The notes under the pieces were generated by a model that was not told the DNA's origin, did no database searches, and saw only the letters and a program-made list of their open reading frames with translations. Below are positions 1 to 13,103 of a DNA stretch of 64,000 nt, piece after piece. The position numbers and the translations under genes are program-made. Location of the stretch: the IMG/VR virus record IMGVR_UViG_3300019458_000020, positions 1 through 64,000 of that record. The stretch is one strand, 5' to 3'. Each line of letters starts with the position of its first letter. Within the stretch, counting starts at the first letter, position 1.

Positions 1-165
1 ATTAATAAAGACACTAAAAAATCATTCGGAGAATTATACAGAGATACTATATTAAAACTTGAAAAATTAAAATCAATGGGTTACAATGTAAAATACATTT
101 GGGAAAATGATTGGAAAAAATTTCAGTGTGGAATAGATAAAAAGATTAAAATACAGAATATTTAA
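1..165 (+). CDS. 3' end of a truncated ORF, probably a Vsr/PD-(D/E)xK-type homing endonuclease
   Basis: Frame 1 is open from base 1 to TAA at 163-165: INKDTKKSFGELYRDTILKLEKLKSMGYNVKYIWENDWKK. The G-Y-x-V-x-x-I-W-E-x-D-W tail is typical of phage Vsr-like endonucleases. Not in the ORF track. Confidence 0.6.
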   Translation: MNKDTKKSFGELYRDTILKLEKLKSMGYNVKYIWENDWKKFQCGIDKKIKIQNI

Positions 166-166
166 A

Positions 167-901
167 ATGAAAATACTGGCATCTACGCTCAATCATAATT
201 TACCGGAGCTAACAGACAACTTGACAGAACAACTTAGACGTTCAAAATTTACTGATTATGAATTGATGATTGTAGATAATGGCTCTAAGGAACCGTTGGC
301 TAAATCCACGACTCATGTTTCTCCTGAGAATACTTTCTTCGGTGGAGGAGTAAATCTTATTCTGGATTACTTTCTTAATGATACCAACCATGAATATCTA
401 TACATTTTCAATAACGATTTGATATTTCATGGACATGGATTCCTAGAACAATCCGTTAGAGAAATGGAGGCTGCTGGTGCAGACGTTTATTCACCATCAG
501 TAATCAATATGTCTCTTGACCAATGTGCATGGAAACAAATGCATTGTTGGGGAACGGGAGGAACAAGAGAAGTGAAGTGGATAGATTTTCAATGTCCAAT
601 ATTAAGTAGAAGATTGTGTCAACACATAAAAAGTTACCCTGACCAACTTGTGTATGGATGGGGTGTGGATTTTTATACCGGAATGGTGTGTCAACAATTG
701 GGATTCAAAACCGTCGTGTCTGATGCCAATTCTATAGGTCATTTAAATTCCCAAACTTTAAAACTTAATAAGGTAAACATCGGATTAAATGATTTTTGTC
801 AACGTGCCGACGCAAATATGTTTGCATTTTTTAACAGTCAACCAGAACTTACCTCACTATTTCATCATTACAGAGAGTGGGCTAAAAATTATACATTATG
901 A
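167..901 (+). CDS. Glycosyltransferase, GT-A fold (GT2-like)
   Basis: IVDNGS, N-x-F-F-G-G-G-V-N, IFNND (DxD-like) and YGWGVD motifs; first gene of a translationally coupled run. Confidence 0.7.
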   Translation: MKILASTLNHNLPELTDNLTEQLRRSKFTDYELMIVDNGSKEPLAKSTTHVSPENTFFGGGVNLILDYFLNDTNHEYLYIFNNDLIFHGHGFLEQSVREMEAAGADVYSPSVINMSLDQCAWKQMHCWGTGGTREVKWIDFQCPILSRRLCQHIKSYPDQLVYGWGVDFYTGMVCQQLGFKTVVSDANSIGHLNSQTLKLNKVNIGLNDFCQRADANMFAFFNSQPELTSLFHHYREWAKNYTL

Positions 902-1530
902 AATTACTTACCGAAATAGCTAGAAATCACAAAACTGATAAAGGAGAAGAAGGACACGTTTATACCGAAGTCTATGATGATTATCTTTTACCAATAAGAT
1001 TAAAGGAGATGAATTTTCTTGAAATAGGTGTATTCGACGGAGAATCTATGAGAATGTGGAAAGAATATTTGCCTAATGCGAATATTATTGGTTTGGATAT
1101 TAATCCTGAATGTAAGAAACATGAAGGAGAGAAAAACAAAGTTTATATAGGTTCTCAAGTAGATGAAATGGTTTTATGGAAGATTTTTAATGAAAACAAA
1201 CCCATTTCAGTTGTAATTGATGATGGAAGTCATCGATGGGATCACGTTATTAGAACTTTTGATATGGTATTTCCTTTATTGGCACCAGGCGGCTTATACT
1301 TTGTTGAAGATTTACATACTTCTTACGCAGGCGACCCTTGGGCCGCAGGTTCAGAGACGGCTATCAATTATCTGAAGGGATTAATTGATGATGTTAATCT
1401 TCGTGGTAAATCTTTTATGGGATTGAAGGAAGTTGCCGGAAAACCATTATCATACAATGAACGTTGTATTGAGTGGGTTCATAATTACAAAAGCCTAATG
1501 GTTATTAAGAAGCGTCAAGAATCACTATGA
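898..1530 (+). CDS. Class I SAM-dependent methyltransferase, MycE/TylE-like sugar O-methyltransferase
   Basis: TDK..H.Y...Y, LEIGVFDGES.RMWKEY, GLDIN, IDDGSH, LAPGGLYFVEDL. Confidence 0.8.
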   Translation: MKLLTEIARNHKTDKGEEGHVYTEVYDDYLLPIRLKEMNFLEIGVFDGESMRMWKEYLPNANIIGLDINPECKKHEGEKNKVYIGSQVDEMVLWKIFNENKPISVVIDDGSHRWDHVIRTFDMVFPLLAPGGLYFVEDLHTSYAGDPWAAGSETAINYLKGLIDDVNLRGKSFMGLKEVAGKPLSYNERCIEWVHNYKSLMVIKKRQESL

Positions 1531-2351
1531 TAAGTTGTGAATTCCACGGAAGACTAGGAAACAATATGTTTCAAGTCGCTGCGGCCGCGGCTTTAGCAAA
1601 AAAAGTCAATGTGGAATTTTCTGTACCAAAATACATGTTAGCAGGTCATAGAGGATCACTTCCATCCGACCTTAATGGTTTTGATTATCCATATAATTAT
1701 CACAATGATTCTGATGTAGAACATCATGAAAAAATCGGAGAGAAGGATTCCAAATTTACTGATTTGCCTATAAGGGATAACATCAAACTTTGTGGATTTT
1801 TTCAATCCAGCAAGTATTTTGATGATATTCGTGAAGAGTTGATTCAAAAATATTTTAAACCAGCAGATTGGGTATTGAAACTCTCGGAGAAATATAAAGT
1901 AAGTGATAAAAGTCTCGGAGTATGTGTAAGACGAGGCGATTATTTGATGTTACAACACAATCATTGTGTATTATCTCCAGAATTTTACCAAAATACCTGT
2001 TCTGATGTTGTTTCTAATGAGAGTATTGATTCGGTATATGTATTTTCCGATGATTTTGATTGGTGTGCTGATGTATTTAGTGAAATATCGCCCATATTTG
2101 TCAAGGATGATAAGTTTGTTCAAATGTATTTAATGACACAAATGAAACATATCATACTGGCTAACTCGACCTTTTCTTGGTGGGGTGCCTATCTCAACAA
2201 TAAAGGAGGTCGAATTTATTTTCCCGACCCTTGGTATGGCCCGGCCAACGATAATATAGATGTCAGTGGTTTGATTCTTCCTAATTGGAGAGTAACTAAA
2301 CACGAAAGAACAATTCAATCATATCTGCAACACGAAGCATTGAAAGGATAA
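1527..2351 (+). CDS. Glycosyltransferase family 11 (alpha-1,2-fucosyltransferase-like)
   Basis: GRLGNNMFQ, GFFQS.KYF, VRRGDY, VFSDD and IILANSTFSWWGAYL are GT11 motifs. Confidence 0.9.
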   Translation: MISCEFHGRLGNNMFQVAAAAALAKKVNVEFSVPKYMLAGHRGSLPSDLNGFDYPYNYHNDSDVEHHEKIGEKDSKFTDLPIRDNIKLCGFFQSSKYFDDIREELIQKYFKPADWVLKLSEKYKVSDKSLGVCVRRGDYLMLQHNHCVLSPEFYQNTCSDVVSNESIDSVYVFSDDFDWCADVFSEISPIFVKDDKFVQMYLMTQMKHIILANSTFSWWGAYLNNKGGRIYFPDPWYGPANDNIDVSGLILPNWRVTKHERTIQSYLQHEALKG

Positions 2352-3062
2352 ATGAAATTAGCAATATGTCTATCCGGCCAACCAAGATTGTTTGATGTCG
2401 CCTACGAATCGTTAAAGCGATTTTACTTTCCAAAGTATGAGTGTGATGTATTCATTCACACATGGAAGGATTCGAACTATAATTCTCAGTTCTCAAATAA
2501 AGTCGTCTCGAATTCCGAAGACCTTCATGGAAATTATATCAAACTGTTCAAACCTAAAAAGGTTATGATAGAAGACCAGATTGTATTCGATAAGACCGGT
2601 ATCTCAGACCCTATATGGGGATGTAAGTTAAATTCGGTATTATCTATGTTTTACTCTGTTCAATTGTCCAACAAACTAAAATGTAAATTTGAACGAGAGA
2701 ATGATTTCAAATATGATTACGTAATGAGAATTAGAACGGATTTGTCATTACACCGACCAATTATTCCGGAAGAAATTCTTCCAAAACACATTGGTTTATT
2801 TAATTGGACTCAGGATTCCGAATATAATGAAAGAGGATTTTCGGATGTATTCTCTGTCGGACCATCAGATTTAATGGATGTATATTCTAATGCTTTTGAT
2901 TCCTTACATCACTATCTATATACGGATAATACATGGAATTTTCATGATTCCAGATTAAGAAACGAATATTTGTTACGAAGACATTTAGAAGTGAATCAAA
3001 TCTCCGTTCAACGATTTCATCATTTAGATGCACAAGACCCTAGTTTCGGAATAGTAAGATGA
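2352..3062 (+). CDS. Putative glycosyltransferase-like protein of viral glycan clusters
   Basis: MKLAICLSGQPR, DVFIHTW, SMFYS, YDYVMRIRTD and SDVF pattern; lies within the GT operon. Confidence 0.55.
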   Translation: MKLAICLSGQPRLFDVAYESLKRFYFPKYECDVFIHTWKDSNYNSQFSNKVVSNSEDLHGNYIKLFKPKKVMIEDQIVFDKTGISDPIWGCKLNSVLSMFYSVQLSNKLKCKFERENDFKYDYVMRIRTDLSLHRPIIPEEILPKHIGLFNWTQDSEYNERGFSDVFSVGPSDLMDVYSNAFDSLHHYLYTDNTWNFHDSRLRNEYLLRRHLEVNQISVQRFHHLDAQDPSFGIVR

Positions 3063-3979
3063 AAACAGACATTATAATTCACGTTTTGCCGTTTGAGATT
3101 GATAGATTTGAATATCAAATACTAGAACTAAAAAAGTGCAGTTCCTTATTGAATACTGACGACCAAATAATTATTGATGCAACATTGAATATCAATGATA
3201 TGTTAATCGATTGGAAAAATTCATCCATTCCTAAAGATTTCTTTATTGACCGATTTCTTCATCTCAAAAATCTATGTGATTACGCCGAATGTGTATTTGA
3301 TGTGGATGATAAGGAAAAATGTCTAGGTATAAACGCCAAGAGAAGAAACAGTATTAGGGAACGAGCAGACAAGTGTGACTCGTTTTTGTATCTGGATAAC
3401 GATATGGTCTATCCACATCATGCTTTAAGATATGCATTAGATGCAGCAAAATTGGTAAATACAGAATATTACCTTATCTCTCCACAATCCACCCAACTAT
3501 GGGATGATTCGTGGAAGGTATTGGTCAATGATTCATATTCGAATGTAGGATGTGATAAAATCACAGAACAGAATCCATTTGAAGTCTGTTCAAGAGTATA
3601 TGGAGATATTGAAGTTGTTCCTGTAGATGGATTCAAATTCGGTGGTGGATGGTTTAATTTATTTTCATCCAAACTATTATCTTATACCGATATTCCTGAT
3701 GAATTGGGAGGATATGGATTAGATGATATGTATGTTATGCAGGCGTGCCAAATTATGAAAAGCTTCGGTATGCCCGTTCAACAGTATATATTAAAAAATC
3801 TTGTGGTAACGCAAAATTACCGTTATGGTTATCACATGCAGGATGTGTATAAGAAGTTTATACCATTCATAAATAAGAAAGAAATGTTCATAACCAATGC
3901 AAAGAACCATTATCAAATGGTGATTCAAAGATTTTGGGAGAAATGTAAACATGATATCATTCATAATCCCTACTCGTAA
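3059..3979 (+). CDS. Putative GT-A fold glycosyltransferase
   Basis: FLYLDND (DxD), GGGWFNL and GGYGLDD acceptor-site-like motif; operon context. Confidence 0.55.
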   Translation: MKTDIIIHVLPFEIDRFEYQILELKKCSSLLNTDDQIIIDATLNINDMLIDWKNSSIPKDFFIDRFLHLKNLCDYAECVFDVDDKEKCLGINAKRRNSIRERADKCDSFLYLDNDMVYPHHALRYALDAAKLVNTEYYLISPQSTQLWDDSWKVLVNDSYSNVGCDKITEQNPFEVCSRVYGDIEVVPVDGFKFGGGWFNLFSSKLLSYTDIPDELGGYGLDDMYVMQACQIMKSFGMPVQQYILKNLVVTQNYRYGYHMQDVYKKFIPFINKKEMFITNAKNHYQMVIQRFWEKCKHDIIHNPYS

Positions 3980-5195
3980 TAATTTGCCTTACGTAAAGAC
4001 GGCAATTTCTAGCATTCGAAAATTTTATTTGGGTGCAGAAATCGTATTATTAGATGACAACTCTACCGATGGAACTGATAAATGGGTTAGCGAAACTTAC
4101 GACCCACATCTTACATATTATAAAAACGAAGGCAGACAAGTGGGACACACCGTTCTCTATGATATCGGTATTAAAATGTGTAAACATGAAATCTTCTCAA
4201 TATTTCATGCCGATATGATTTGTGGGCCTAATTATGTTGAAAATCTTCTTAAACATTTGAAGCCAGAAGGTGTAATTTCAGCAACAAGAATAGAACCACC
4301 GTTACATCCTCCCGGAAAAGAAAAAATTGTGATGGATTTCGGCATGTATCCCGGGGATTTTAAACAATCCGAGTTTATTACATTTTGTCGTGATTCCCAA
4401 GAGAATTCGTCTAATAAGGATGTAACGACAAGGGGTATATTCGCACCGTGGGCAATGTATAAAGAAGATTTCCTAAAAATCGGCGGGCATGATTCTTTGT
4501 TTTCTCCATTCCCATACGAAGATTCCGATATATTTCAACGTTTTATTTTAGCCGGATACAATATCAAACAAAGTCGTGATTCTTTTGTTTATCATTTTAC
4601 ATGTCGTGGACACAGATGGACAGAACAAGTTCAAAAAGATGATAACTTCTATAAGTTATGTTGTGCAAAAAACATGAATCACTTTATACGAAAGTGGGGA
4701 AGCTGGATAGAAAACGACGAGTTATGTTATCCAGTTATCAAACCATTCTACAACATCGGATTTGTGGTTACAAATTGCAATCTCCAATTACTCGGTGCAT
4801 TGGAACCTTGGTGTTCTACCATCTCATGTGATTGTCCAGAATGGGAATCTTACATCAAACAAGTTCAATCAGGAACTCCATTCGACTTAAAAAAGAGGGT
4901 GTTTTATAGGTCGGCTGAAATCAAGAATGACATAATTGTTCATTTTGATGCTTCGCAGTTGACACAAGAAAGATTCACATTCCTTACTCAATTACCAAAA
5001 ATACTTTTGGATAGTGGAGATTTGGGAGAAATGAAATTCGACATATTTACGTTCTTCATAAAGAGAATGCCAAGGTTGGAGTCATTGTTGATTCACAATA
5101 ACAATGAACTCTATCGTTCACGATTAATTGAAATTCCGGTGACCGACGAATATTACACCAACGAATTATTTAGAGTCTTTCAAAATACCAAGTAA
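3951..5195 (+). CDS. Glycosyltransferase family 2
   Basis: ISFIIPTRN, LLDDNSTDGT, HADM, IGGHD..F....EDSD...R, VYHF. Confidence 0.85.
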   Translation: MISFIIPTRNNLPYVKTAISSIRKFYLGAEIVLLDDNSTDGTDKWVSETYDPHLTYYKNEGRQVGHTVLYDIGIKMCKHEIFSIFHADMICGPNYVENLLKHLKPEGVISATRIEPPLHPPGKEKIVMDFGMYPGDFKQSEFITFCRDSQENSSNKDVTTRGIFAPWAMYKEDFLKIGGHDSLFSPFPYEDSDIFQRFILAGYNIKQSRDSFVYHFTCRGHRWTEQVQKDDNFYKLCCAKNMNHFIRKWGSWIENDELCYPVIKPFYNIGFVVTNCNLQLLGALEPWCSTISCDCPEWESYIKQVQSGTPFDLKKRVFYRSAEIKNDIIVHFDASQLTQERFTFLTQLPKILLDSGDLGEMKFDIFTFFIKRMPRLESLLIHNNNELYRSRLIEIPVTDEYYTNELFRVFQNTK

Positions 5196-6135
5196 CGGTG
5201 TCTTTTAAAGCTTTGTCGAATGGTGTGTGTTCAATCTTACCAAACGTGTGTTCAAAATCTGTGGTGTCGATTGCATATCTAAAATCGTGACCTTTTCTAT
5301 CTTCTACGAATTGTATTGATTTTTCTGGGTCTTTATTACACAATACACAGAGTTTTTTGACCAGGTCAAGATTTCGGATTTCATTATTTCCACCAATCAA
5401 ATACTGGCCTCCTGGCTGTCCACGTTTTACAACTTCCCAAACACACTTACAATGGTCATCGACGTAAATCCAATCTCGAATGTTTGTTCCTATTCCATAA
5501 ACAGGAACCGGTTCGTCGTTCTTCAGCTTCTTAATTGCTAGAGGAATAAGTTTTTCTGGATATTGTCTTGGACCAAAGTTATTTGAACAGTTGGTTATCA
5601 TGACAGGAAAATTGTGTGTTCTATAGAATGATTTACACAATAAATCCGATGACGCCTTCGAAGCGGCATACGGTGAATTTGGATGGTATGGAGAACGTTT
5701 TGTAAATGGCAAATCACCATCACCTAAATCACCAAACACTTCATCGGTGGAAATGTGAATGAATCTTACATCTGTTCTTCCTTTCCATAATTCCAAGAAA
5801 GTATTCAATAGAGTGAAGGTTCCGTTGATATTGGTTGTAATGAACGATTGGCCGGATTCTATCGACCTATCCACATGTGATTCAGCAGCAAAATGAACAA
5901 TTGTGTCGATGTTATATCGTTCGTATATTGTCTTCAGAAGAGATACGTCATTTATGTCTCCTTTGTAAAACTCATATCTATTACGAAGAACAAAATAGTC
6001 AGGTAAATTTTTGTGGCTTGCTGCGTAGGTGCATAAGTCAAGATTCACCACTAATTCCACTTCATCCTTTTTGGCCAAGAGATGAATAAAATTGCTACCG
6101 ATAAAACCAAGTCCCCCCGTGCAAAGTATTCTCAT
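5170..6135 (-). CDS. rmlB: dTDP-glucose 4,6-dehydratase
   Basis: TGGLGFIGSNF, HFAAESHVDRSI, HISTDEVFG, SPYAASKASSD, NNFGPRQYPEKLIP, DRKGHDFRYA. Confidence 0.95.
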   Translation of the reverse strand: MRILCTGGLGFIGSNFIHLLAKKDEVELVVNLDLCTYAASHKNLPDYFVLRNRYEFYKGDINDVSLLKTIYERYNIDTIVHFAAESHVDRSIESGQSFITTNINGTFTLLNTFLELWKGRTDVRFIHISTDEVFGDLGDGDLPFTKRSPYHPNSPYAASKASSDLLCKSFYRTHNFPVMITNCSNNFGPRQYPEKLIPLAIKKLKNDEPVPVYGIGTNIRDWIYVDDHCKCVWEVVKRGQPGGQYLIGGNNEIRNLDLVKKLCVLCNKDPEKSIQFVEDRKGHDFRYAIDTTDFEHTFGKIEHTPFDKALKDTVTWYFERL

Positions 6136-6335
6136 ATATTTTTAAATTCTTTTCTAAGTTGTTTAATAGATTTATTGAATTTTGCGTTGCACTTTTGTGA
6201 ACAAAATTTAGTTTTTATTATATTTTCTGTTCCTTCTTTTTTGAATAATTTTTCACAAAAATCACATCGAATCGAAAAAATAAACACATCAGTATTTATT
6301 TGACTCTTTCTTAGGAATATCTTATTCAGTATCAT
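6132..6335 (-). CDS. Small CxxC...FCSxxC zinc-finger protein, possibly a homing endonuclease remnant
   Basis: CDFC-x15-FCSQKC; its stop overlaps the rmlB start (ATGA). Confidence 0.5.
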   Translation of the reverse strand: MILNKIFLRKSQINTDVFIFSIRCDFCEKLFKKEGTENIIKTKFCSQKCNAKFNKSIKQLRKEFKNI

Positions 6336-6402
6336 CCATCATACATATCATTTTAAATTCCGACCCACCAATAATAAAAATACGCTTGTATCATACAATT
6401 TC

Positions 6403-6410
6403 TATTTATT
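6403..6410 (+). promoter_or_regulatory. TATTTATW putative late promoter
   Basis: TATTTATT 5 nt before ATG 6416; the motif recurs before many genes in this window. Confidence 0.55.
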
Positions 6411-6415
6411 GCAAT

Positions 6416-6763
6416 ATGACACTGTTATTAATTTTATCCTGTTTTATCGCAATATTTTTACTTGCTTGGTTCAAATCCGATTTCATTATTGAATACGGAA
6501 AGTTACTGGGATTATCCAAGTTATTAAAACTTCGTGAATATAAAATGAAAAAATTGGAACATGCTAATCCCGTTCCAACATATACTCAATTCTTGAGAAT
6601 GACTTATGATAACTTCTTCGTTAAATTGATTACTTGTCCTATTTGCTTAGCCATTTGGTTATCAATCATCGTAGGAATATTCTATCATCTATCTACTTTT
6701 ATTCCTGTCATTTGTATAATGTCTTTGATATTTTACGGAATTTGTAGAAAACTATTAACTTAA
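6416..6763 (+). CDS. DUF1360-like membrane protein
   Basis: Hydrophobic segments with LITCPICLAIWLS. Start moved from TTG 6386 to ATG 6416 because of the upstream TATTTATT. Confidence 0.6.
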   Translation: MTLLLILSCFIAIFLLAWFKSDFIIEYGKLLGLSKLLKLREYKMKKLEHANPVPTYTQFLRMTYDNFFVKLITCPICLAIWLSIIVGIFYHLSTFIPVICIMSLIFYGICRKLLT

Positions 6764-6764
6764 T

Positions 6765-7055
6765 ATGGATGTCCGTGGCGTTGGTGCGTTCTTTTATTTT
6801 TTAACCAGCAATGGATTAAATGGAGTGAGTCCAGATACGAACGCATTTATAGTATGTGTTGAAGAATATAGCCGTCTTTGTGCATGTGACAGTCCTGAAT
6901 TTAGAGAGTCTAAACAAAATAATTGTAGAGCACTCTACGAAACATGTATATCTCGGTCGGATGGATTAAAATCTATATTCTTATCCAAGACACAAGGAAA
7001 CAGGATTACTTTTTATTCCGACCACGGAAAAATACTAAAAACTTTTTCTCGTTAA
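6765..7055 (+). CDS. Hypothetical protein (Cys-containing)
   Basis: 96-aa ORF starting 1 nt after the previous stop. Confidence 0.55.
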   Translation: MDVRGVGAFFYFLTSNGLNGVSPDTNAFIVCVEEYSRLCACDSPEFRESKQNNCRALYETCISRSDGLKSIFLSKTQGNRITFYSDHGKILKTFSR

Positions 7056-7321
7056 TTTCCGTCTTCTGGTTTAACATCAAATATATCCGATGGAAGTTCG
7101 GAACCATCAGGTAGATGCAATTTTCCATTTTTCAATTGTTCCTTGCCAGCTTCAAGTGTTCCTAAAACTACAGCCGCACCTGGGTCATGAGTCATATAAG
7201 ATAAGAAAGTAAGAAGGTCATAATCTACCTTTTCTCCATTATGAAACATAACTAATACTTCACAATCATCCATATCTTCGGGATAACGTGTTAATGCTTT
7301 TTTAAGATAACCTAATTTCAT
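7052..7321 (-). CDS. Hypothetical protein
   Basis: 89-aa ORF tightly packed in the minus-strand operon. Confidence 0.6.
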   Translation of the reverse strand: MKLGYLKKALTRYPEDMDDCEVLVMFHNGEKVDYDLLTFLSYMTHDPGAAVVLGTLEAGKEQLKNGKLHLPDGSELPSDIFDVKPEDGN

Positions 7322-7322
7322 A

Positions 7323-7589
7323 TTATTCGTATTTCTTTGTTTCGCCTTGTTTGAAATTTTTGAACATGACTTTCCCTTCTGCGGCTAAAATCAACATTTC
7401 ATCCAGTTCTTGAATTAAATCATTCCTTTGTATATTCAAGATATTAGTTTTCCTCGTTGCATCAGCCACATCTTTGTCTGTCTTTGACTTATCTCTCTTC
7501 AATTCTTCGAGATGCCAAATTTTTAGGTTTACTATTCCGAGTTGGTCTATTAAATTCCCGAATGATACATTCATAGTTTTTCTTTCCAT
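7323..7589 (-). CDS. DUF4254-like helical protein
   Basis: GNLIDQL.I.NLKIWHLEE..R and N.QRNDLI.ELD pattern; this family is often found beside glycan genes. Confidence 0.6.
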   Translation of the reverse strand: MERKTMNVSFGNLIDQLGIVNLKIWHLEELKRDKSKTDKDVADATRKTNILNIQRNDLIQELDEMLILAAEGKVMFKNFKQGETKKYE

Positions 7590-7655
7590 ATACCGAAATA
7601 ATTTGTCTCGGAATATAATTTGTTATCTACTCTAAAAATCCCATATATTAATTTT

Positions 7656-8885
7656 TTAATCATTTCCAATGACTTTAAATTGTGGGCATGGAACAATAAA
7701 TTTACCACCAGCTTTTATGTAATCTGATTCTCTTTTTATAAATTCCGACAAAAAATGCCACGGGAGTATAAGTAAATAATCAGGTTTAGCTTTTCTCATT
7801 TCATCTTCCGAAAAAATTGGTATATTGGTTCCAACCGTCTTCAACCCCCACTTATACGGGCTTCTTTCGGCCATACCATCAATCAGTGTATGATCCAAAC
7901 CAAAATATTGTAACAACGTGTTTCCCTTGGTAGATGCACCATATCCCCACACCGTCTTTCCGTTAACTTTTTCAGTTTTAACAAAATCAACAACTTGTTT
8001 CTTTAGATTTTCTATTTTGTAATAGAAACTTTCCCAAACAACTAATTGTTTATCACCGACATGTCCATTGATCTTTTCATGAAACAACAGAGACTCCATT
8101 CTGAAAAGACAAACGTCTCTGTATGGTTGAGTTGAAAAGTTTTCTGTTTTAAACGTATCCTTTACAACGTATATTCTGAACGACCCACCATTTACATCGT
8201 TCAATTGACAATCTATAACTCTAAATCCATTTGACTCAAGAAGGTTTTTCATATTAGTCAATGTATAGTAGTAAATGTGTTCGTGACAAATGTTATCAAC
8301 TGCCACTTGATGAATCATAAGTGGTGTGTAACTCAATTGCAAAACAAACAGACCATCATCATCCATAACGTTATATACATCTTGTAAAAATGGATTTGGA
8401 TTATCCAAATCATAAAACATTGCTATACACGTCACTACTTTTGCTTTAAGATGGCCGAATTTTTGACTTCTATATGCTTTTTCACTAAAGTAATCTTGAA
8501 CAATAACATTTGCGTGGGTTTCGGATTCTTTCTTAAATGTATCATCGGCGGGGTCTATTCCGATTCGGATTATATTATCATCCAAAAAGCTTAAAAGAGT
8601 CCCATCGTTACAAGCAATATCCAACCATACATCATTTTCTTTTAGATTAACTAAACCACAAATCGAATGAACTATAGACTTTAGTTCATTTTTCATGGTG
8701 GCATTAATTCCGGAACGATACCAGTATCTTCCATACATAGTATCCAATGGTGCAGGCTTTTCTAGTCTGACCGCCCCTAAATTATTATCATAAACAAGTT
8801 TTATTTCTTGTTTAGGATGTGCTGTTTGACCTTCTTTAATAAAGTCAGACACATGTAATTCTCCGAGTGTAAATAATTCTTTCAT
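7656..8885 (-). CDS. NDP-hexose C3-methyltransferase (NovU/TcaB9-like)
   Basis: YWYRSG, LDIACNDGTLL, IGIDP, ICHEHIYYY, NGGSFR, WGYGASTKGNTLLQY, LILPWHF, GGKFIVP.P. Confidence 0.85.
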   Translation of the reverse strand: MKELFTLGELHVSDFIKEGQTAHPKQEIKLVYDNNLGAVRLEKPAPLDTMYGRYWYRSGINATMKNELKSIVHSICGLVNLKENDVWLDIACNDGTLLSFLDDNIIRIGIDPADDTFKKESETHANVIVQDYFSEKAYRSQKFGHLKAKVVTCIAMFYDLDNPNPFLQDVYNVMDDDGLFVLQLSYTPLMIHQVAVDNICHEHIYYYTLTNMKNLLESNGFRVIDCQLNDVNGGSFRIYVVKDTFKTENFSTQPYRDVCLFRMESLLFHEKINGHVGDKQLVVWESFYYKIENLKKQVVDFVKTEKVNGKTVWGYGASTKGNTLLQYFGLDHTLIDGMAERSPYKWGLKTVGTNIPIFSEDEMRKAKPDYLLILPWHFLSEFIKRESDYIKAGGKFIVPCPQFKVIGND

Positions 8886-8886
8886 A

Positions 8887-9738
8887 TTACCAAATCCAAT
8901 TCTTTAAACATTCTTCCAACGATTCATGAACTTCTTTCATTTCTAATCCAACACTTTTTAATTTATCGGTATTCAACACCGTATTTGACCTTGGTGCCCT
9001 CACCATCGAATTAAATTGTTCCAAACTTTCGAAATATTGAAATTCCTTTTCTACTTTTAGCGTTTTCTTTATCATTTCTACAACTTCAGTTGTTGTGATT
9101 TCGCCTTTATTGGTTACATTATATATTCCAAACGGAACCTTGTTTTGTAGGGAATCCAAACACACCTTTACGTATTCTTTTTTATTTGATAAGGAATTCT
9201 TAACATTTAAAAGTGTGTTGTATCTTAACAATTTAGAAATGTAGTTTCTTTCATTGTTTCTTTCTTCAAATGGAATTCTCAATCTCCAAATGTATTTATC
9301 AGGCAACTCACTCAACATTTCTTCTCCTAATGCTTTCGTTCCACTGTAAAAACTACATGGTTGATTTTTAAAGGAAAAATTCGGTTCATCTTCCTCGGTA
9401 AATCCTCCATCTTTATATCCATTGTATATACAGCCCGATGAAACATGTCCCAACACTATGTTTTTTCTTGCACATAAAGTGGCTAATATTCTAGGAAATA
9501 CTACATTACCTGATAATGTTTCTGATTTAGCATCCTCACACACATCTACATTTGGTTTTCCGGTGTATCCAGCACAATTGATAATAGTGTCTATTTTAAA
9601 TGTAGATATAAATCTATCAATCTCATCGATATTTGCATCTATTGCAGACATTGGATATGACCCTATTCCACGACCTGCTAATTGTCGTTGAAATTCATGT
9701 CCTATATATCCACTAGACCCAAATAATAAAACTTTCAT
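8887..9738 (-). CDS. NDP-4-keto-6-deoxyglucose 3,5-epimerase/4-reductase (UER1/NRS-ER type, RmlD superfamily)
   Basis: GSSGYIG Rossmann motif; AGYTGKPNVDVCE, SSGCIY, SFYSGTKA and LRIP match the bifunctional type rather than classic RmlD. Confidence 0.8.
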   Translation of the reverse strand: MKVLLFGSSGYIGHEFQRQLAGRGIGSYPMSAIDANIDEIDRFISTFKIDTIINCAGYTGKPNVDVCEDAKSETLSGNVVFPRILATLCARKNIVLGHVSSGCIYNGYKDGGFTEEDEPNFSFKNQPCSFYSGTKALGEEMLSELPDKYIWRLRIPFEERNNERNYISKLLRYNTLLNVKNSLSNKKEYVKVCLDSLQNKVPFGIYNVTNKGEITTTEVVEMIKKTLKVEKEFQYFESLEQFNSMVRAPRSNTVLNTDKLKSVGLEMKEVHESLEECLKNWIW

Positions 9739-10598
9739 ACCAATCTCTCTAAGTAACTTTTATAATCACTTTTTGGTAGGCTTCCTACCGATTCCTTAAA
9801 TTGTTCTTTAGAAATGAAACCATTTACTAAACATGATTCTTCATAACATCCAATCATTATTCCCTGTCTTTCTTGGACAGATTGAATGTATGCTGATGCT
9901 TGAAATAATGTGGCTGGGGTACCGGCATCCAACCATGCTGTTCCTCTTTCCATAATTTTGGCTGTTAGTGTTCCTTCTTGCATATACATTTTTAACAAAT
10001 CCACTATTTCTAACTCCCCTCGTGTGGATGGCCTTAATGTATTAGCAAAATTAGAAGCCATTCCATCAAAATAATACAGACCCGGTATAGCATATTTACT
10101 CTTTGGTTGTATTGGTTTTTCTTCTAAAGAAATAACGTTACCCATTTTATCGAACTCAACTACACCATAAGCTCTTGGATTATTAACTTCGTATCCAAAC
10201 ACCGACGCTCCTTTTGGTGGAGTTATAACATATTTGTATTTATCAGGAGGTTGAATATTTCCATGAAATATGTTATCTCCGAGAATCAAACAGGAGGGTT
10301 TTTCTTCCAAGTAATCCTCAGCAATAATTAATGCCTGAGCTAATCCTTTTGGTTGGTCTTGAATCGCATATTGTATGCACAATCCCCATTTGTTTCCGTT
10401 TCCTAATAAGTTTTTGTAAAAATCAATGTATTGAGGGCTTGTTATCAATAATATCTCTTTTATTCCGTTATTGATTAAAGTGGTCAACGAATAATAGACC
10501 ATCGGTTTATCATATACAGGCAATAGTTGTTTATTAACCATTGTTGTCAATGGATATAATCGAGTTCCTGACCCACCTGATAAGATTATGCCTTTCAT
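9735..10598 (-). CDS. rmlA: Glucose-1-phosphate thymidylyltransferase
   Basis: KGIILSGGSGTRLYPLT, KQLLPVYDKPM, LILGDNIF, EEKP, RGELEI, WLDAGT. Confidence 0.95.
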   Translation of the reverse strand: MKGIILSGGSGTRLYPLTTMVNKQLLPVYDKPMVYYSLTTLINNGIKEILLITSPQYIDFYKNLLGNGNKWGLCIQYAIQDQPKGLAQALIIAEDYLEEKPSCLILGDNIFHGNIQPPDKYKYVITPPKGASVFGYEVNNPRAYGVVEFDKMGNVISLEEKPIQPKSKYAIPGLYYFDGMASNFANTLRPSTRGELEIVDLLKMYMQEGTLTAKIMERGTAWLDAGTPATLFQASAYIQSVQERQGIMIGCYEESCLVNGFISKEQFKESVGSLPKSDYKSYLERLV

Positions 10599-10850
10599 TT
10601 ATTTACTTTGATGATTTTGATTTAAATAATTAACAATTTCATTTACCAATTGATTACATCCTTCTTCGGATTCTAATAAAGCCAGATCGCCGTCGGTGAG
10701 GCCAAATACAAACACCTTTCCGAGAGTCCACACAGCAAGTTCAACATCTGTATCCTTACATGTAATAGAATGACTTCCAGTAAATGATTCCCCCATTGCT
10801 TTCAGGGGAAACGTTTCATTAAGTAGTTTGAATAGATGTCTGGTTTTCAT
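10599..10850 (-). CDS. Hypothetical protein
   Basis: 83-aa ORF abutting the rmlA start. Confidence 0.55.
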   Translation of the reverse strand: MKTRHLFKLLNETFPLKAMGESFTGSHSITCKDTDVELAVWTLGKVFVFGLTDGDLALLESEEGCNQLVNEIVNYLNQNHQSK

Positions 10851-11589: not shown

Positions 11590-11645
11590 ACATATAACCG
11601 TTTCTACGTTAATATGTATGTCCGAAAAACTAAAAACGTTTTATT

Positions 11646-12326: not shown

Positions 12327-12338
12327 AATAATTTCCTT

Positions 12339-13059: not shown

Positions 13060-13103
13060 GATTATGATTATAATAGTTTATCGACAAACAATCTCAATAT
13101 TTT

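What the first reader, a model, noticed from the sequence alone, without database searches (positions are those of the whole stretch)
167..10598. Largely self-contained phage glycan-building island (donor synthesis, five transferases, two sugar methylases)
Seen: two convergent operons. The + operon has five GT-like genes (GT2, GT2-like, GT11, two divergent) and an O-methyltransferase. The - operon has RmlA, an epimerase/reductase, a C3-methyltransferase and RmlB. Established: RmlA, RmlB and an epimerase/reductase make NDP-L-rhamnose-type donors. No flippase, polymerase or undecaprenyl-P transferase is present in this window, and the GTs lack TM anchors. Inference: a cytoplasmic stepwise pathway builds a methylated oligosaccharide on a phage substrate. 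The best candidate is virion protein (see the [S/T]-G-S finding); DNA is the alternative.
Basis: partly seen in the sequence, partly recalled or inferred. Interest (0 to 1): 0.82.

Follow-up and report, generated by a model that had tools for sequence, protein, structure and literature searches.

The report
Phage sugar-building and glycan-assembly gene island
A very large tailed phage carries genes to make a methylated rhamnose-type sugar and five enzymes to string sugars together, much as giant viruses do for their coats; the genes look real and intact, but what the glycan is attached to is still unknown.

Summary
Window 167-10598 carries six tightly coupled + strand genes: four GT-A-fold glycosyltransferases, one GT11, and one MycE/TylE-type sugar O-methyltransferase. 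On the - strand are RmlA, a bifunctional 3,5-epimerase/4-reductase of the plant/Mimivirus L780 type, a TylC3/TcaB9-type sugar C-methyltransferase, and RmlB. Catalytic residues are conserved wherever I could map them.

Four corrections:
- No RmlC is needed, because the reductase is the bifunctional type.
- The - strand genes form two units, split by a + strand pair (a 3-TM DUF1360 protein and a Cys-rich ORF).
- The island is cut by the contig end, and relatives carry more glycan genes upstream.
- Only one donor pathway is encoded, so "largely self-contained" is overstated.

The flanks are phage genes, so this is not a host LPS locus. No flippase-, polymerase- or priming-transferase-like membrane protein occurs in the window or in 65 related viral loci.

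The acceptor was not determined. I rank virion protein first (~0.4), because the toolkit is shared with giant viruses, evolves at core-gene rate and is viral in the atlas searches. Host envelope glycan follows (~0.3), then DNA (~0.1). This is a new variant of a known kind, of moderate interest.

The parts
1..165 (+). Last 54 codons of an ORF cut by the contig end. It marks an assembly break, not the island's true boundary. Function not determined.
   Evidence: Sequence and frame. A second assembly (ENA, 340,916 bp) ends 18 bp further out. No similarity to the NUMOD3 endonuclease at the equivalent place in relative L030.
167..901 (+). Divergent GT2-like (GT-A) glycosyltransferase, 244 aa, soluble.
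   Evidence: PF00535, 27 bits against a cutoff of 23.3. The family occurs in 25 viral loci. N38, D84 (in 'NND' in place of DxD), H88, D140, D168, D186 and H192 are at least 90% conserved. No TM segment.
898..1530 (+). Metal-dependent sugar O-methyltransferase. It is a MycE/TylE-type catalytic domain only, 210 aa.
   Evidence: Methyltransf_24. PDB hits 3ssm (which I recognise as MycE; the PDB label is only 'Methyltransferase') at 4.6e-20 and 8ia9 (demethylmacrocin O-MT) at 1.5e-18. D109, H112, E137 and D138 align with chain D295, H298, E323 and D324, which are MycE D275, H278, E303 and D304 after a 20-residue tag (residue roles recalled from memory). These residues are at least 90% conserved in the family.
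1527..2351 (+). GT11-family glycosyltransferase (alpha-1,2-fucosyltransferase family), 274 aa.
   Evidence: PF01531, 4.6e-22, 79 bits. R135, D138, Y139 ('RRGDY') and 'NSTFSWWG' are conserved across 10 viral homologues.
2352..3062 (+). DUF7796 protein: a GT-A fold closest to GT6 (blood-group A/B type) transferases, 236 aa.
   Evidence: PF25072, 1.7e-8. AF2 pLDDT 88. All top 50 PDB fold hits are GT6 enzymes; the best is 4ayl (the Bacteroides GT6 enzyme BoGT6a) at E 1.8e-8, TM 0.58/0.64. Viral fold relatives occur in cyanophages and giant viruses. Invariant residues: G9, D32, R128, D130, D165, E205. Co-occurs with GT11 in 8 loci.
3059..3979 (+). Glycosyltransferase of a GT-A family that appears viral and has no Pfam model, 306 aa.
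   Evidence: No Pfam or NCBIfam hit. 119 metagenomic clusters, none with a Pfam hit and none named beyond 'hypothetical protein'. Invariant D113-x-D115, D222 and D223. AF2 pLDDT 93, pTM 0.92. PDB fold hits are mainly GT-A glycosyltransferases (plus related nucleotidyltransferases), E about 1e-6. The nearest atlas clusters are 100% viral, and the other clusters listed by features 76-98%. No relative in 185,579 species genomes, though only one search pattern was used.
3951..5195 (+). GT2 glycosyltransferase (residues 1-225) with an uncharacterised C-terminal region of about 190 aa, 414 aa in all.
   Evidence: PF00535, 6.2e-19; Glyco_transf_7C, 7.9e-6. D34/D35, 'HAD' at 86-88 and 'EDSD' at 189-193 are present. 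Its 3' end overlaps the 3' end of RmlB by 26 nt.
5170..6135 (-). RmlB, dTDP-glucose 4,6-dehydratase, 321 aa.
   Evidence: TIGR01181, 3.4e-117, 391 bits against a cutoff of 365.
6132..6335 (-). 67-aa Cys-containing ORF overlapping the RmlB start by 4 nt. Possible zinc ribbon; function unknown.
   Evidence: Sequence. Only sub-threshold treble-clef/TRASH hits. No homologue in the related loci; it is a singleton in the clustering.
6416..6763 (+). Small membrane protein (DUF1360, about 3 TM segments), 115 aa from the ATG.
   Evidence: PF07098, 22 bits against a cutoff of 21. TM windows at 1-25 and 66-114. Conserved in 5 relatives. In L029 it follows the GT2b homologue with a 4-nt overlap on the same strand.
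6765..7055 (+). 96-aa Cys-rich ORF, always paired with the DUF1360 protein. Function unknown.
   Evidence: No family hit. Conserved with the membrane protein in 5 relatives.
7052..7321 (-). 89-aa ORF of unknown function, last gene of the RmlA unit.
   Evidence: No family hit. Conserved in L026, L030 and L041.
7323..7589 (-). DUF4254 mini-protein (83-88 aa, predicted helical) that travels with the sugar C-methyltransferase.
   Evidence: PF14063, 1.6e-9. Present in 13 other viral loci, 12 of which also hold a full-length C-methyltransferase (the 13th holds a longer fused form), often adjacent. Atlas clusters are 80-100% viral.
7656..8885 (-). NDP-4-keto-hexose C-methyltransferase of the TylC3/TcaB9/MtmC type, 409 aa.
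   Evidence: Methyltransf_14, 2e-40, plus Methyltransf_23. PDB hits: D-mycarose 3-C-MT 4rv9 at 8.4e-36, TcaB9 at 4e-27, and the sugar 3-C-MT 5t64. The 'HEH' motif is conserved in the alignment. There is no Cys in the first 75 residues, so the Zn site I recall in TcaB9 is absent.
8887..9738 (-). Bifunctional NDP-4-keto-6-deoxyglucose 3,5-epimerase/4-reductase (NRS/ER or UGER type), 283 aa.
   Evidence: PDB hits: 4qqr, labelled '3,5-epimerase/4-reductase' and which I take to be Arabidopsis NRS/ER, at 4.8e-38; Mimivirus L780 UDP-L-rhamnose synthase 7jid at 6.7e-30; bacterial RmlD no better than 8e-13. Below the TIGR01214 cutoff (82 against 224 bits). S101, C103, Y131, K135 and K169 align with 4qqr T113, C115, Y144, K148 and K183 (roles recalled from the NRS/ER literature), and with L780 C108 and K175. 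The L780 catalytic residues are stated in PMC9614988.
9735..10598 (-). RmlA, glucose-1-phosphate thymidylyltransferase, 287 aa.
   Evidence: TIGR01207, 1.7e-112, 375 bits against a cutoff of 360.65.
10599..10850 (-). 83-aa ORF abutting RmlA and overlapped by the DruA-like gene upstream. It links the sugar genes to the DNA-metabolism gene array. Function unknown.
   Evidence: No family hit. Conserved in L026 and L030.

Best explanation
This is a phage-encoded glycan-building island with three layers of certainty.

Donor synthesis (shown by homology, not by assay):
- RmlA turns glucose-1-phosphate and dTTP into dTDP-glucose.
- RmlB makes dTDP-4-keto-6-deoxyglucose.
- A TylC3/TcaB9-type enzyme can add a C-methyl branch next to the keto group. 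C3 is most likely; C5 is not excluded.
- A single bifunctional epimerase/reductase of the plant/Mimivirus L780 type finishes the sugar and replaces RmlC plus RmlD.
- The products would be dTDP-L-rhamnose and/or a C-methyl-6-deoxy-L-hexose.

Assembly and tailoring (inferred):
- Five soluble transferases (three GT2-like GT-A enzymes, one GT11 and one GT6-like DUF7796) extend an oligosaccharide step by step in the cytoplasm. Other donors come from the host or from the rest of the genome.
- The adjacent, co-occurring GT11 and GT6-like pair suggests a 6-deoxyhexose-alpha-1,2 cap plus an alpha-1,3 branch, as in blood-group A/B antigens.
- A MycE/TylE-type O-methyltransferase methylates a hydroxyl of a 6-deoxyhexose that has already been transferred.

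Acceptor (inferred, least certain): a phage-made virion protein, so that progeny particles carry a methylated deoxyhexose glycan as chloroviruses, mimiviruses and mycobacteriophages do. The enzymology deserves about 0.8 confidence and the virion-protein acceptor about 0.4. The confidence of 0.42 below covers the whole statement, acceptor included.
For: Enzyme identities:
- RmlA and RmlB score above the NCBIfam equivalog cutoffs.
- The epimerase/reductase matches 4qqr (NRS/ER) at 4.8e-38 and L780 at 6.7e-30, and keeps the catalytic Cys and Lys and the SDR triad. L780 accepts dTDP-linked substrate (PMC9614988).
- The C-methyltransferase is homologous to three solved sugar 3-C-methyltransferases.
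- The O-methyltransferase has all four MycE active-site residues.
- GT-A folds and motifs are present in the transferases.

Phage context:
- The flanks hold a dNMP kinase homologue, a weak clamp-loader-like ORF, RNR, DnaB, UvsX, gp32, baseplate and sheath genes.
- G+C content is uniform.

Conserved and vertically inherited:
- Relative L026 has the same gene order. Its island proteins are 67-82% identical, against 83% for the sheath and 59-84% for neighbouring genes.

Viral toolkit:
- The atlas clusters nearest the 3059-3979 family and DUF7796 are mostly viral.
- DUF7796 fold relatives occur in cyanophages and in Catovirus, Tupanvirus, chlorovirus, CroV and Fadolivirus.
- The epimerase/reductase type and 2-O-methylated rhamnose are hallmarks of giant-virus capsid and fibril glycans (PMC9614988).

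No lipid-linked machinery:
- No multi-pass membrane protein occurs in the window.
- None of Wzx/Wzy size occurs among 1083 ORFs of at least 150 aa in 65 related viral loci.

Precedents and candidate acceptors:
- Mycobacteriophage capsid and tail-tube glycans (as described in PMC12619734) and glycoproteins detected in virions of jumbo phage XacN1 (PMC5852040).
- The window encodes a Ser/Gly/Thr-rich sheath insert and a 1232-aa Ser-rich fibre-like protein.
Against: - No datum identifies the acceptor.
- The island sits in, and is co-oriented with, an array of DNA-metabolism genes, not structural genes.
- The TATTTATA motif found upstream of the sheath, tube and baseplate genes is absent from 1-14500.
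- A conserved 3-TM protein is translationally coupled to the transferase operon in relative L029, which hints at a membrane-associated step.
- Soluble transferases are equally typical of host O-antigen and capsule pathways.
- Only 64 kb of a genome of at least 341 kb was seen, so a priming transferase or a base hydroxymethylase could lie elsewhere.
- GT11 enzymes normally need GDP-fucose, for which no genes are present.
- The regiochemistry of the C-methylation, and whether the epimerase/reductase accepts the methylated intermediate, are inferred only.
Confidence: 0.42

Rival explanations
1. The island remodels a host envelope glycan during infection. The phage transferases act on the host's undecaprenyl-phosphate-linked O-antigen, capsule or glycolipid intermediates, or on S-layer or flagellar glycans. 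They rely on the host's priming transferase, flippase and ligase. The result would be a changed cell surface, for example to block superinfection or to stop progeny sticking to debris.
For: - Large cyanomyoviruses carry comparable clusters: 13 transferases including GT11, plus sugar-nucleotide epimerases. Their authors read these as cell-surface modification genes (PMC12801897).
- Synechococcus phage DSL-LC02 has an analogous set of GDP-mannose dehydratase, C-methyltransferase, fucose synthase and seven transferases.
- From my own knowledge: GT11 and GT6 enzymes of bacteria work on O-antigen-type acceptors, and soluble transferases are the norm in such pathways.
- A conserved 3-TM DUF1360 protein is coupled to the transferase operon in L029.
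- The sugar genes are co-oriented with early/middle-type DNA-metabolism genes, and the structural-gene motif is absent.
Against: - No priming transferase, flippase, polymerase or ligase occurs in the window or in 65 related viral loci.
- The transferase families are mostly viral and not close to bacterial genes. Recently captured host surface genes would look otherwise.
- Island proteins diverge at the same rate as core phage proteins rather than being hypervariable.
- The phage looks lytic. No integrase was found among the ORFs scanned in the window.
Confidence: 0.3
2. The island hypermodifies the phage DNA. The transferases attach a mono- to oligosaccharide to a modified base (5-hydroxymethyl-pyrimidine or another handle), which protects the genome from host nucleases.
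For: - The island is embedded in DNA-metabolism genes: two DruA-like genes, a dNMP kinase homologue (PHROG only; no Pfam hit on record) and a weak, sub-threshold clamp-loader-like hit.
- DruA-like genes flank it in all five relatives.
- A strong Mom homologue lies 10 kb away.
- Phage DNA glycans of up to three sugars made by clustered transferases are on record: Pyle et al. 2024, whose title I saw cited in PMC12619734; the details are from my own recollection.
Against: - No pyrimidine hydroxymethylase, cytosine methyltransferase or TET/JBP-type oxygenase was found among the roughly 50 ORFs scanned.
- None of the transferases resembles the T4 alpha/beta-glucosyltransferase type. Fold hits are to glycan- and protein-modifying GT-A enzymes.
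- I know of no report of a five-transferase chain with O- and C-methylated deoxyhexose on DNA.
- A Mom-type modification would already account for the neighbouring genes.
Confidence: 0.12
3. The island makes a product that is not attached to virion, envelope or DNA. Candidates are a free or secreted oligo- or polysaccharide, a glycosylated small molecule, or glycosylation of a host cytoplasmic protein to take over the cell.
For: - The closest solved relatives of both methylases (MtmC, TcaB9 and KijD1; MycE and TylE) tailor sugars of secondary metabolites.
- From my own knowledge, dTDP-rhamnose is used to modify the host translation factor EF-P in bacteria.
- No acceptor is identified.
Against: - No polyketide, aglycone or export genes occur in the island or in related loci.
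- Five transferases are many for a regulatory protein modification.
- The same families occur in giant viruses, where virion glycans are the known use.
Confidence: 0.08

Closest known systems
Giant-virus autonomous glycosylation (Mimivirus R141/L780 UDP-L-rhamnose pathway; chlorovirus PBCV-1 A064R/A061L)
   Same: - Virus-encoded 4,6-dehydratase plus a single bifunctional 3,5-epimerase/4-reductase. The phage enzyme hits L780 at 6.7e-30 and keeps its catalytic Cys and Lys.
- Soluble GT-A transferases.
- A SAM-dependent O-methyltransferase acting on terminal rhamnose after transfer (PMC9614988).
- DUF7796-fold proteins are shared with Catovirus, Tupanvirus, chlorovirus and CroV.
   Different: - This is a tailed phage of bacteria.
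- The first two steps are bacterial-type dTDP enzymes (RmlA, RmlB) rather than a UDP-glucose dehydratase.
- A sugar C-methyltransferase is added. The giant-virus glycan review I searched does not mention one ('C-methyl': 0 occurrences).
- The O-methyltransferase is MycE/TylE-like.
- The glycan and its acceptor are unproven here.
Mycobacteriophage virion O-glycosylation (Freeman et al. 2023, as described in PMC12619734)
   Same: Phage-encoded cytoplasmic transferases that decorate the phage's own structural proteins. This is the mechanism I favour for the window.
   Different: - As I recall them, those systems comprise a few transferases and no donor-synthesis genes.
- Their targets are C-terminal tails of capsid and tail-tube subunits.
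- No sequence relationship was tested, because the paper is not held in the library.
- Here a donor pathway, two methylases and five transferases are present, and no target is known.
Glycosyltransferase-rich 'cell wall synthesis and modification' islands of large cyanomyoviruses (P-SSM2, S-SCSM1, S-SCSM2R; DSL-LC02)
   Same: - Long co-oriented runs of GT2, GT11 and other transferases with sugar-nucleotide dehydratases, epimerases and methyltransferases in T4-like aquatic phages.
- DSL-LC02 has a homologous C-methyltransferase (35% identity) next to a dehydratase and an epimerase/reductase.
- S-SCSM2R also carries a Mom gene.
   Different: - The cyanophage version is GDP-mannose-based.
- The window uses dTDP-glucose with an NRS/ER-type finisher.
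- The function of the cyanophage islands is itself untested.
Branched-chain deoxysugar pathways of actinomycete antibiotics (L-mycarose TylC3/TylK/TylC2; nogalose; mycinose tailoring by MycE/TylE)
   Same: The chemical logic is the same: 4-keto-6-deoxy intermediate, then C-methylation, epimerisation, 4-reduction, glycosyl transfer and O-methylation on the attached sugar. Both methylases are homologous.
   Different: - No 2-deoxygenation or amination genes are present.
- One bifunctional enzyme replaces separate epimerase and reductase enzymes.
- The C-methyltransferase lacks the Cys residues of the Zn site.
- The O-methyltransferase lacks the N-terminal auxiliary domain of MycE.
- There is no aglycone pathway.
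Histo-blood-group antigen synthesis (GT11 H-antigen fucosyltransferase followed by a GT6 A/B transferase; bacterial BoGT6a)
   Same: A GT11 gene is immediately followed by a protein whose best solved-structure matches are all GT6 enzymes. The two families co-occur in 8 viral loci.
   Different: - DUF7796 is only 13% identical to BoGT6a and has no Pfam GT6 hit.
- It has neither a clear DXD nor a clear NXN motif at the expected place.
- Donors and acceptor are unknown. The pairing is a lead, not a demonstrated pathway.

Membership tests
Bacterial dTDP-L-rhamnose pathway (RmlABCD) | RmlA glucose-1-phosphate thymidylyltransferase | tested here: met
   TIGR01207, 375 bits against a cutoff of 360.65
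Bacterial dTDP-L-rhamnose pathway (RmlABCD) | RmlB dTDP-glucose 4,6-dehydratase | tested here: met
   TIGR01181, 391 bits against a cutoff of 365.1
Bacterial dTDP-L-rhamnose pathway (RmlABCD) | Separate cupin-fold RmlC 3,5-epimerase | tested here: not met
   No cupin or dTDP-sugar isomerase hit among the island ORFs, or among the roughly 50 window ORFs scanned
Bacterial dTDP-L-rhamnose pathway (RmlABCD) | RmlD-equivalog 4-reductase | tested here: not met
   TIGR01214, 82 bits against a cutoff of 224. Bacterial RmlD structures score no better than 8e-13, against 4.8e-38 for NRS/ER.
NRS/ER (UGER) bifunctional 3,5-epimerase/4-reductase | Full-length similarity to characterised members (Arabidopsis NRS/ER, Mimivirus L780) | tested here: met
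   4qqr at 4.8e-38 over residues 3-274; 7jid at 6.7e-30 over residues 1-276
NRS/ER (UGER) bifunctional 3,5-epimerase/4-reductase | Epimerase acid/base Cys and Lys (L780 C108 and K175), plus the SDR Ser/Thr-Tyr-Lys triad | tested here: met
   C103, K169, S101, Y131 and K135 align. The roles of C108 and K175 are stated in PMC9614988.
NRS/ER (UGER) bifunctional 3,5-epimerase/4-reductase | Converts NDP-4-keto-6-deoxyglucose to NDP-L-rhamnose with NADPH | not testable with these tools
   Needs an enzyme assay
Sugar C-methyltransferases (TylC3/TcaB9/MtmC/KijD1) | SAM-binding domain plus the Methyltransf_14 C-terminal domain | tested here: met
   PF08484, 2e-40; PF13489, 1.2e-14. 4rv9 at 8.4e-36.
Sugar C-methyltransferases (TylC3/TcaB9/MtmC/KijD1) | Catalytic Glu-His pair (TcaB9 E224/H225; roles recalled from memory) | tested here: met
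   'CHEH' aligns with MtmC 'YHEH'. The preceding Tyr is Cys in the phage enzyme.
Sugar C-methyltransferases (TylC3/TcaB9/MtmC/KijD1) | N-terminal four-Cys zinc site (feature recalled from memory) | tested here: not met
   No Cys in residues 1-75. The alignment to the solved enzymes starts at residue 36-39.
MycE/TylE metal-dependent sugar O-methyltransferases | Metal ligands Asp/Glu/Asp and the catalytic His | tested here: met
   D109, H112, E137 and D138 align with MycE D275, H278, E303 and D304 (roles recalled from memory). Conserved in 9 viral homologues.
MycE/TylE metal-dependent sugar O-methyltransferases | N-terminal auxiliary (oligomerisation) domain | tested here: not met
   The 210-aa phage protein matches only chain residues 184-389 of 419
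CAZy GT11 | Pfam Glyco_transf_11 above threshold and conserved donor-binding motifs | tested here: met
   79 bits against a cutoff of 23.9. 'RRGDY' and 'NSTFSWWG' are conserved (motif identity recalled from memory).
CAZy GT11 | Uses GDP-L-fucose | not testable with these tools
   No GDP-fucose synthesis genes in the window. The donor could be host GDP-fucose or the phage's own 6-deoxy-L-hexose.
CAZy GT6 | Sequence membership (Pfam GT6 model, conserved motifs) | tested here: not met
   Only DUF7796 is hit. No PDB sequence hit at E up to 10. 13% identity in the structural alignment.
CAZy GT6 | GT6-like GT-A fold | tested here: met
   All top 50 Foldseek PDB hits are GT6 enzymes. The best has E 1.8e-8 and TM 0.58/0.64.
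Wzx/Wzy-type O-antigen or capsule locus | Priming phosphoglycosyl transferase, flippase and polymerase (multi-pass membrane proteins) | tested here: not met
   No ORF with at least 4 hydrophobic segments in the window other than the tape-measure protein. None of flippase or polymerase size in 65 related loci. The rest of the genome was not seen.
Phage DNA glycosylation systems (T-even type; MT/TET-dependent 5hmC glycans) | Enzyme that creates the hydroxymethyl handle (dCMP/dUMP hydroxymethylase, or cytosine MT plus TET/JBP) | tested here: inconclusive
   None among the roughly 50 window ORFs scanned, but at least 277 kb of the genome is unseen
Virus-encoded virion glycosylation (chlorovirus, mimivirus, mycobacteriophage) | Glycan covalently attached to virion proteins and dependent on the viral genes | not testable with these tools
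   Needs virions.

The most novel reading that the evidence does not exclude
A jumbo tailed phage coats its own virion, for example the Ser/Gly-rich outer domain of the sheath or the Ser-rich fibre. The coat would be an oligosaccharide bearing a C-branched, O-methylated 6-deoxy-L-hexose and a blood-group-like GT11/GT6 branch. The toolkit that makes it (NRS/ER-type synthase, DUF7796, the orphan GT-A family and the DUF4254 partner of the C-methyltransferase) is shared between Caudoviricetes and giant viruses. If so, autonomous virion glycosylation would be a cross-realm viral trait, and this would be the first branched-chain sugar reported on a virus particle.
Probability: 0.22. Interest if true: 0.78.

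Novelty: new variant of a known kind. Interest (0 to 1): 0.5.

Why it matters
- Virus-encoded glycosylation is established for giant viruses and a few mycobacteriophages. For the many transferase-rich islands of large aquatic phages, the product and the acceptor are unknown.
- This island is a compact case with intact active sites and a predicted distinctive sugar (C-methyl and/or O-methyl 6-deoxyhexose). That sugar would be easy to trace by mass spectrometry, so it can settle whether such islands decorate virions, host envelopes or DNA.
- It shows a hybrid pathway: bacterial RmlA and RmlB feeding a eukaryote/giant-virus-type bifunctional synthase.
- It gives first functional leads for three unannotated families: DUF7796 as a GT6-like transferase, an orphan GT-A family with DxD, and DUF4254 as a companion of sugar C-methyltransferases.

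Tried and rejected
- **Nucleotide similarity.** Megablast of 1-12000 against GenBank phages found no match.
- **Host LPS locus.** Rejected. The flanks are phage replication, recombination and tail genes, and G+C content is uniform.
- **Classical RmlC/RmlD route.** Rejected in favour of the bifunctional NRS/ER type.
- **A split RmlC.** I suspected the two small ORFs at 7052-7589 were a split RmlC. They are in different frames; one is DUF4254 and the other has no hit.
- **Upstream continuation in the same phage.** Not recovered. The second assembly ends at the same place. Searches with the relatives' upstream GT2, as a single protein and as a profile, did not return the window's contig.
- **Cellular homologues of the orphan GT-A family.** None in 185,579 species genomes, but only one peptide pattern was usable. 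The DUF7796 alignment was too variable to search.
- **Co-occurrence of the island with the Ser/Gly-rich sheath.** Only one contig, a close relative, carries both. The other sheath-bearing contigs are too short, so the test is uninformative.
- **Sigma-70-type promoters and intrinsic terminators.** No enrichment over shuffled sequence. Operon limits therefore rest on gene spacing only.
- **Literature.** The Freeman et al. 2023 paper is not held. DUF4254 appears in two papers, found by full-text search; I did not open them, so whether they give a functional lead is unchecked.
- **Lineage.** I could not confirm whether the phage belongs to the 'moraphage' lineage.

Full report
**Where the window comes from.** The window is positions 1-64000 of IMG/VR contig IMGVR_UViG_3300019458_000020, which is 250,813 bp. 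The same sequence lies at the end of a 340,916-bp ENA metagenome contig. The element is a very large T4-like myovirus. Its genes include:
- a ribonucleotide reductase with an HNH-bearing insert, a DnaB-type helicase, a UvsX-like recombinase, an exonuclease and a gp32-like protein;
- a T4-type baseplate protein, a gp19-like tube protein, a tape-measure-like protein and a 1056-aa tail sheath.

There is no nucleotide match in GenBank phages. The nearest deposited relatives by sheath protein are Microcystis phage Mel-JY01, a 484-kb metagenomic phage (LR756508) and the Flavobacterium 'immuto' phages. G+C content is 0.30-0.41 throughout, with no step at the island. The refutation condition 'flanking sequence shows this is a host LPS locus' is therefore not met.

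**The observation.** All ten large ORFs are present as described.

On the + strand six genes run from 167 to 5195, with starts and stops overlapping or abutting:
- a weak GT2 (27 bits; cutoff 23.3);
- a Methyltransf_24 protein;
- a GT11 (79 bits);
- DUF7796;
- an ORF with no family hit;
- a clear GT2 (69 bits) with an extra C-terminal region of about 190 aa.

On the - strand are:
- RmlA and RmlB, both above the NCBIfam equivalog cutoffs;
- a C-methyltransferase (Methyltransf_14, 2e-40);
- an RmlD_sub_bind protein that falls well below the RmlD equivalog cutoff.

**The two unannotated transferases.**
- The ORF at 3059-3979 belongs to a family of 119 metagenomic clusters, none with a Pfam hit and none named beyond 'hypothetical protein'. 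In an alignment of 44 members D113-x-D115 is invariant. The AlphaFold model is confident (pLDDT 93, pTM 0.92). Its PDB fold matches are mainly GT-A glycosyltransferases at E of about 1e-6, with some related nucleotidyltransferases. They include GpgS, hyaluronan synthases, TarS/TarP, GalNAc-T2 and collagen galactosyltransferase.
- The DUF7796 model has pLDDT 88. Its top 50 PDB matches are all GT6 enzymes: BoGT6a of Bacteroides ovatus, human GTA/GTB and alpha-3-GalT. The best has E 1.8e-8 and TM 0.58/0.64.
- Against predicted viral structures, DUF7796 matches uncharacterised proteins of cyanophages (S-PRM1, three paralogues in S-SKS1, S-SCSM1). It also matches proteins of giant viruses (Catovirus, Sylvanvirus, Tupanvirus, chlorovirus MT325, Fadolivirus, CroV).
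- The weak GT2 at 167-901 has 'NND' in place of DxD. D84, H88, D140, D168, D186 and H192 are at least 90% conserved across 25 viral homologues.
- The GT11 keeps 'RRGDY' and 'NSTFSWWG'.

None has a hydrophobic segment.

**The donor pathway.**
- Its best solved relatives are 4qqr (4.8e-38), labelled '3,5-epimerase/4-reductase' in the PDB and which I take to be Arabidopsis NRS/ER, and Mimivirus L780 UDP-L-rhamnose synthase (7jid, 6.7e-30). Bacterial RmlD structures score 8e-13 or worse.
- In the alignments, C103 and K169 match L780 C108 and K175. The giant-virus glycan review names these as the catalytic residues confirmed by mutagenesis.
- S101, Y131 and K135 match the SDR triad.
- The same review states that L780 accepts dTDP- as well as UDP-linked 4-keto-6-deoxyglucose.

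This explains why no RmlC is present: one enzyme does the work of RmlC and RmlD. The family is abundant in metagenomes, with more than 8000 clusters at about 50% identity. JGI often labels them after the plant RHM enzyme. It has no close counterpart in deposited phage genomes, where the best match is about 31% identical over 61% of the query.

**The two methylases.**
- The C-methyltransferase is homologous over residues 36-405 to three solved sugar 3-C-methyltransferases: MtmC, TcaB9 and the enzyme of 5t64.
- It keeps the Glu-His pair ('CHEH' against 'YHEH'). It has no Cys in its first 75 residues, so the zinc site I recall in TcaB9 is absent.
- Enzymes of this family act on NDP-4-keto sugars, which is what RmlB supplies.
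- C3 methylation is the most likely outcome. Family members that methylate C5 exist, so the position is an inference.
- The + strand methyltransferase matches the catalytic domains of MycE (3ssm, 4.6e-20) and TylE (8ia9, 1.5e-18). As I recall, both methylate the 2-hydroxyl of a 6-deoxyhexose that is already attached.
- D109, H112, E137 and D138 align exactly with MycE D275, H278, E303 and D304 after allowing for a 20-residue tag. The roles of these residues are from memory.

**Inferred chemistry.** The chain would run Glc-1-P, dTDP-Glc, dTDP-4-keto-6-deoxy-Glc, an optional C-methylation, epimerisation and 4-reduction, then transfer, then O-methylation. The product would be L-rhamnose and/or a nogalose- or vinelose-like branched sugar. 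Every step rests on homology.

**Anatomy corrections.** The - strand genes are two units.
- RmlA-ER-CMT, a 66-nt gap, then DUF4254 and an 89-aa ORF run from 10598 to 7052.
- A 67-aa Cys-containing ORF and RmlB run from 6335 to 5170.
- Between them lie two + strand genes: a DUF1360 membrane protein with about three TM segments (6416-6763) and a 96-aa Cys-rich ORF.
- In the more distant relative L029 this pair follows the GT2b homologue directly on the same strand with a 4-nt overlap. It therefore belongs with the transferase operon, and the RmlB module looks like an insertion.
- Upstream, RmlA abuts an 83-aa ORF and a DruA-like gene. The same strand continues with only short gaps (12-56 nt) through a dNMP kinase homologue, a weak clamp-loader-like gene and a second DruA-like gene.

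**The left boundary is an assembly break.** Both assemblies end within 18 bp of each other, inside an ORF. Five relatives share the island at the same genomic position: L026, L029, L030, L041 and L042.
- L026 is syntenic along the whole island. Its island proteins are 67-82% identical and its sheath is 83% identical.
- In L030 and L026 the + operon continues upstream with another GT2, DUF6492, a second Methyltransf_24, several unknown ORFs and an NTP-transferase/RpiB fusion.
- L029 instead has a cupin, an NTP transferase, a RuBisCO-large-like protein and the C-methyltransferase upstream.
- I could not find these genes on the window's contig.

The island in the window is thus probably incomplete. 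With one donor pathway for five transferases, 'largely self-contained' is too strong.

**Wider distribution.** Searches with the C-methyltransferase and with the relatives' GT2 returned about 60 viral loci. These carry long co-oriented runs of SDR dehydratases and epimerases, GT2, GT1/GT4, DegT aminotransferases, FkbM methyltransferases and nucleotidyltransferases.
- Among 1083 ORFs of at least 150 aa in these loci, none looks like a flippase, polymerase or priming transferase.
- GT11 and DUF7796 co-occur in 8 loci, including contigs only 26-31% identical to the window proteins.
- DUF4254 accompanies the C-methyltransferase in 13 other loci, among them the 735-kb metagenomic phage LR756501.
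- Synechococcus phage DSL-LC02 has the GDP-based analogue: GMD, C-methyltransferase, fucose synthase and seven transferases.

**What the glycan is attached to.** Nothing I could run identifies the acceptor.

In favour of a viral acceptor, most simply a virion protein:
- the transferase families are mostly viral in the atlas searches, and no relative was found in 185,579 species genomes, though that search used a single pattern;
- the toolkit overlaps with giant viruses, where capsid or fibril glycosylation is the demonstrated use;
- the island evolves at the pace of core genes rather than as a hypervariable surface-antigen locus;
- lipid-linked machinery is absent across all related loci;
- phage precedents exist;
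- Ser-rich candidates are encoded nearby, namely the sheath insert and a 1232-aa fibre-like protein.

Against it:
- the sugar genes are embedded in, and co-oriented with, DNA-metabolism genes;
- the motif TATTTATA lies upstream of the sheath, tube, baseplate and several other - strand genes, but is absent from 1-14500. It occurs 20 times in the window against 9.5 +/- 2.9 expected, and 15 of the 20 read on the - strand;
- a conserved small membrane protein is coupled to the operon in L029;
- soluble transferases are also the rule in host O-antigen and capsule pathways, so their lack of anchors does not discriminate;
- authors of the comparable cyanophage islands favour host-surface modification.

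For DNA, the neighbourhood is suggestive: two DruA-like genes, a dNMP kinase and a strong Mom homologue at 20305-21078. However, no enzyme that would create a hydroxymethyl handle was found in the window. The folds also resemble glycan- or protein-modifying GT-A enzymes rather than the T4-type DNA glucosyltransferases.

My ranking is virion protein about 0.4, host envelope about 0.3, DNA about 0.1 and other about 0.1.

**Comparison with known systems.** The island works most like the autonomous glycosylation machinery of giant viruses, with chemistry borrowed from actinomycete deoxysugar tailoring. It sits in a genomic setting like the transferase islands of large cyanomyoviruses.
- It is not a member of the classical RmlABCD pathway. 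RmlC is absent, and the fourth enzyme fails the RmlD equivalog test.
- It is not a Wzx/Wzy locus.
- DUF7796 is GT6-like in fold but is not a GT6 family member by sequence.
- I rate it a new variant of a known kind. The differences are the hybrid dTDP/NRS-ER route, the C-methyltransferase with its DUF4254 companion, and the GT11/GT6-like pair in a tailed phage.

**Limits.**
- Only 64 kb of a genome of at least 341 kb was seen.

Noticed in passing
window 20305-21078 (-); 10819-11589 (-); 13104-14312 (-): A strong Mom-family protein (PF25680, 4.6e-43) and two DruA-like (PF14236) proteins. The first DruA-like protein has a Mom-like C-terminus (phrog_1384). Three paralogues of a DNA-modification fold in one phage suggest base modification by a non-sugar chemistry. 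The DruA-like genes flank the glycan island in all five relatives.
   Followed up: partly
window 7323-7589 (-); loci L001, L004-L011, L024-L026, L030: An 83-88-aa DUF4254 protein, predicted helical, accompanies the sugar C-methyltransferase in 13 other viral loci and is often directly adjacent. The phage C-methyltransferase lacks the Cys residues of the N-terminal Zn site seen in solved homologues, so a partner protein is conceivable.
   Followed up: partly
window intergenic sites at 20289, 21797, 32653, 42500, 45349, 46699, 51814, 52212, 58119 (reading on the - strand): The motif (A)TATTTATA lies just upstream of the sheath, tube, tape-measure/baseplate and several unknown - strand genes. It occurs 20 times against 9.5 +/- 2.9 expected, and no shuffle reached 20. 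No copy lies in 1-14500. It may be a phage-specific (late?) promoter element.
   Followed up: partly
window 1-165, and the end of ENA contig k141_279683 (L028): Two independent assemblies (250.8 kb and 340.9 kb) stop within 18 bp of each other inside the same ORF. This could be a repeated mobile gene or a true genome end. What lies beyond is unknown.
   Followed up: partly
window 54899-58069 (-): The 1056-aa tail sheath has an insert of about 400 aa rich in Ser, Gly and Thr (many S-G-S triplets) ahead of a conserved C-terminal sheath domain. The full-length form is conserved at 60-83% identity in more than 20 IMG/VR contigs.
   Followed up: partly
window 59061-62759 (-): A 1232-aa Ser/Thr-rich protein with internal repeats (recurring 'LFGTSSNAVSSSY..LTASFAL.SPS' units) and no PHROG hit. 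It looks like a tail fibre.
   Followed up: no
window 21834-25133 (-): The ribonucleotide reductase gene matches its PHROG family (phrog_367) in two stretches. HNH-endonuclease families match residues about 460-680, which suggests an intein- or intron-like insert.
   Followed up: no
window 46753-48339 (+); 36685-37437 (-): Two further homing-endonuclease-type genes: a 528-aa protein matching phrog_3339 and phrog_559, on the opposite strand to its neighbours, and a NUMOD3 protein.
   Followed up: no
L029 3406-4608 (+), a 363.8-kb ENA contig: A distant relative carries a RuBisCO-large-subunit-like gene next to a cupin and an NTP transferase inside its glycan island. That is an unusual setting for a RuBisCO-like protein.
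   Followed up: no
window 6416-7055 (+); L029 12149-12804: A DUF1360 3-TM protein and a 96-aa Cys-rich ORF always occur together. In L029 they are translationally coupled to the last transferase gene. In the window they are separated from it by the inverted RmlB module.
   Followed up: partly
window 45420-45902 (-); 17653-18627 (-): The phage encodes an Hsp20/alpha-crystallin small heat-shock protein and an AAA-type ATPase whose best PHROG carries a 'porphyrin biosynthesis' label.
   Followed up: no
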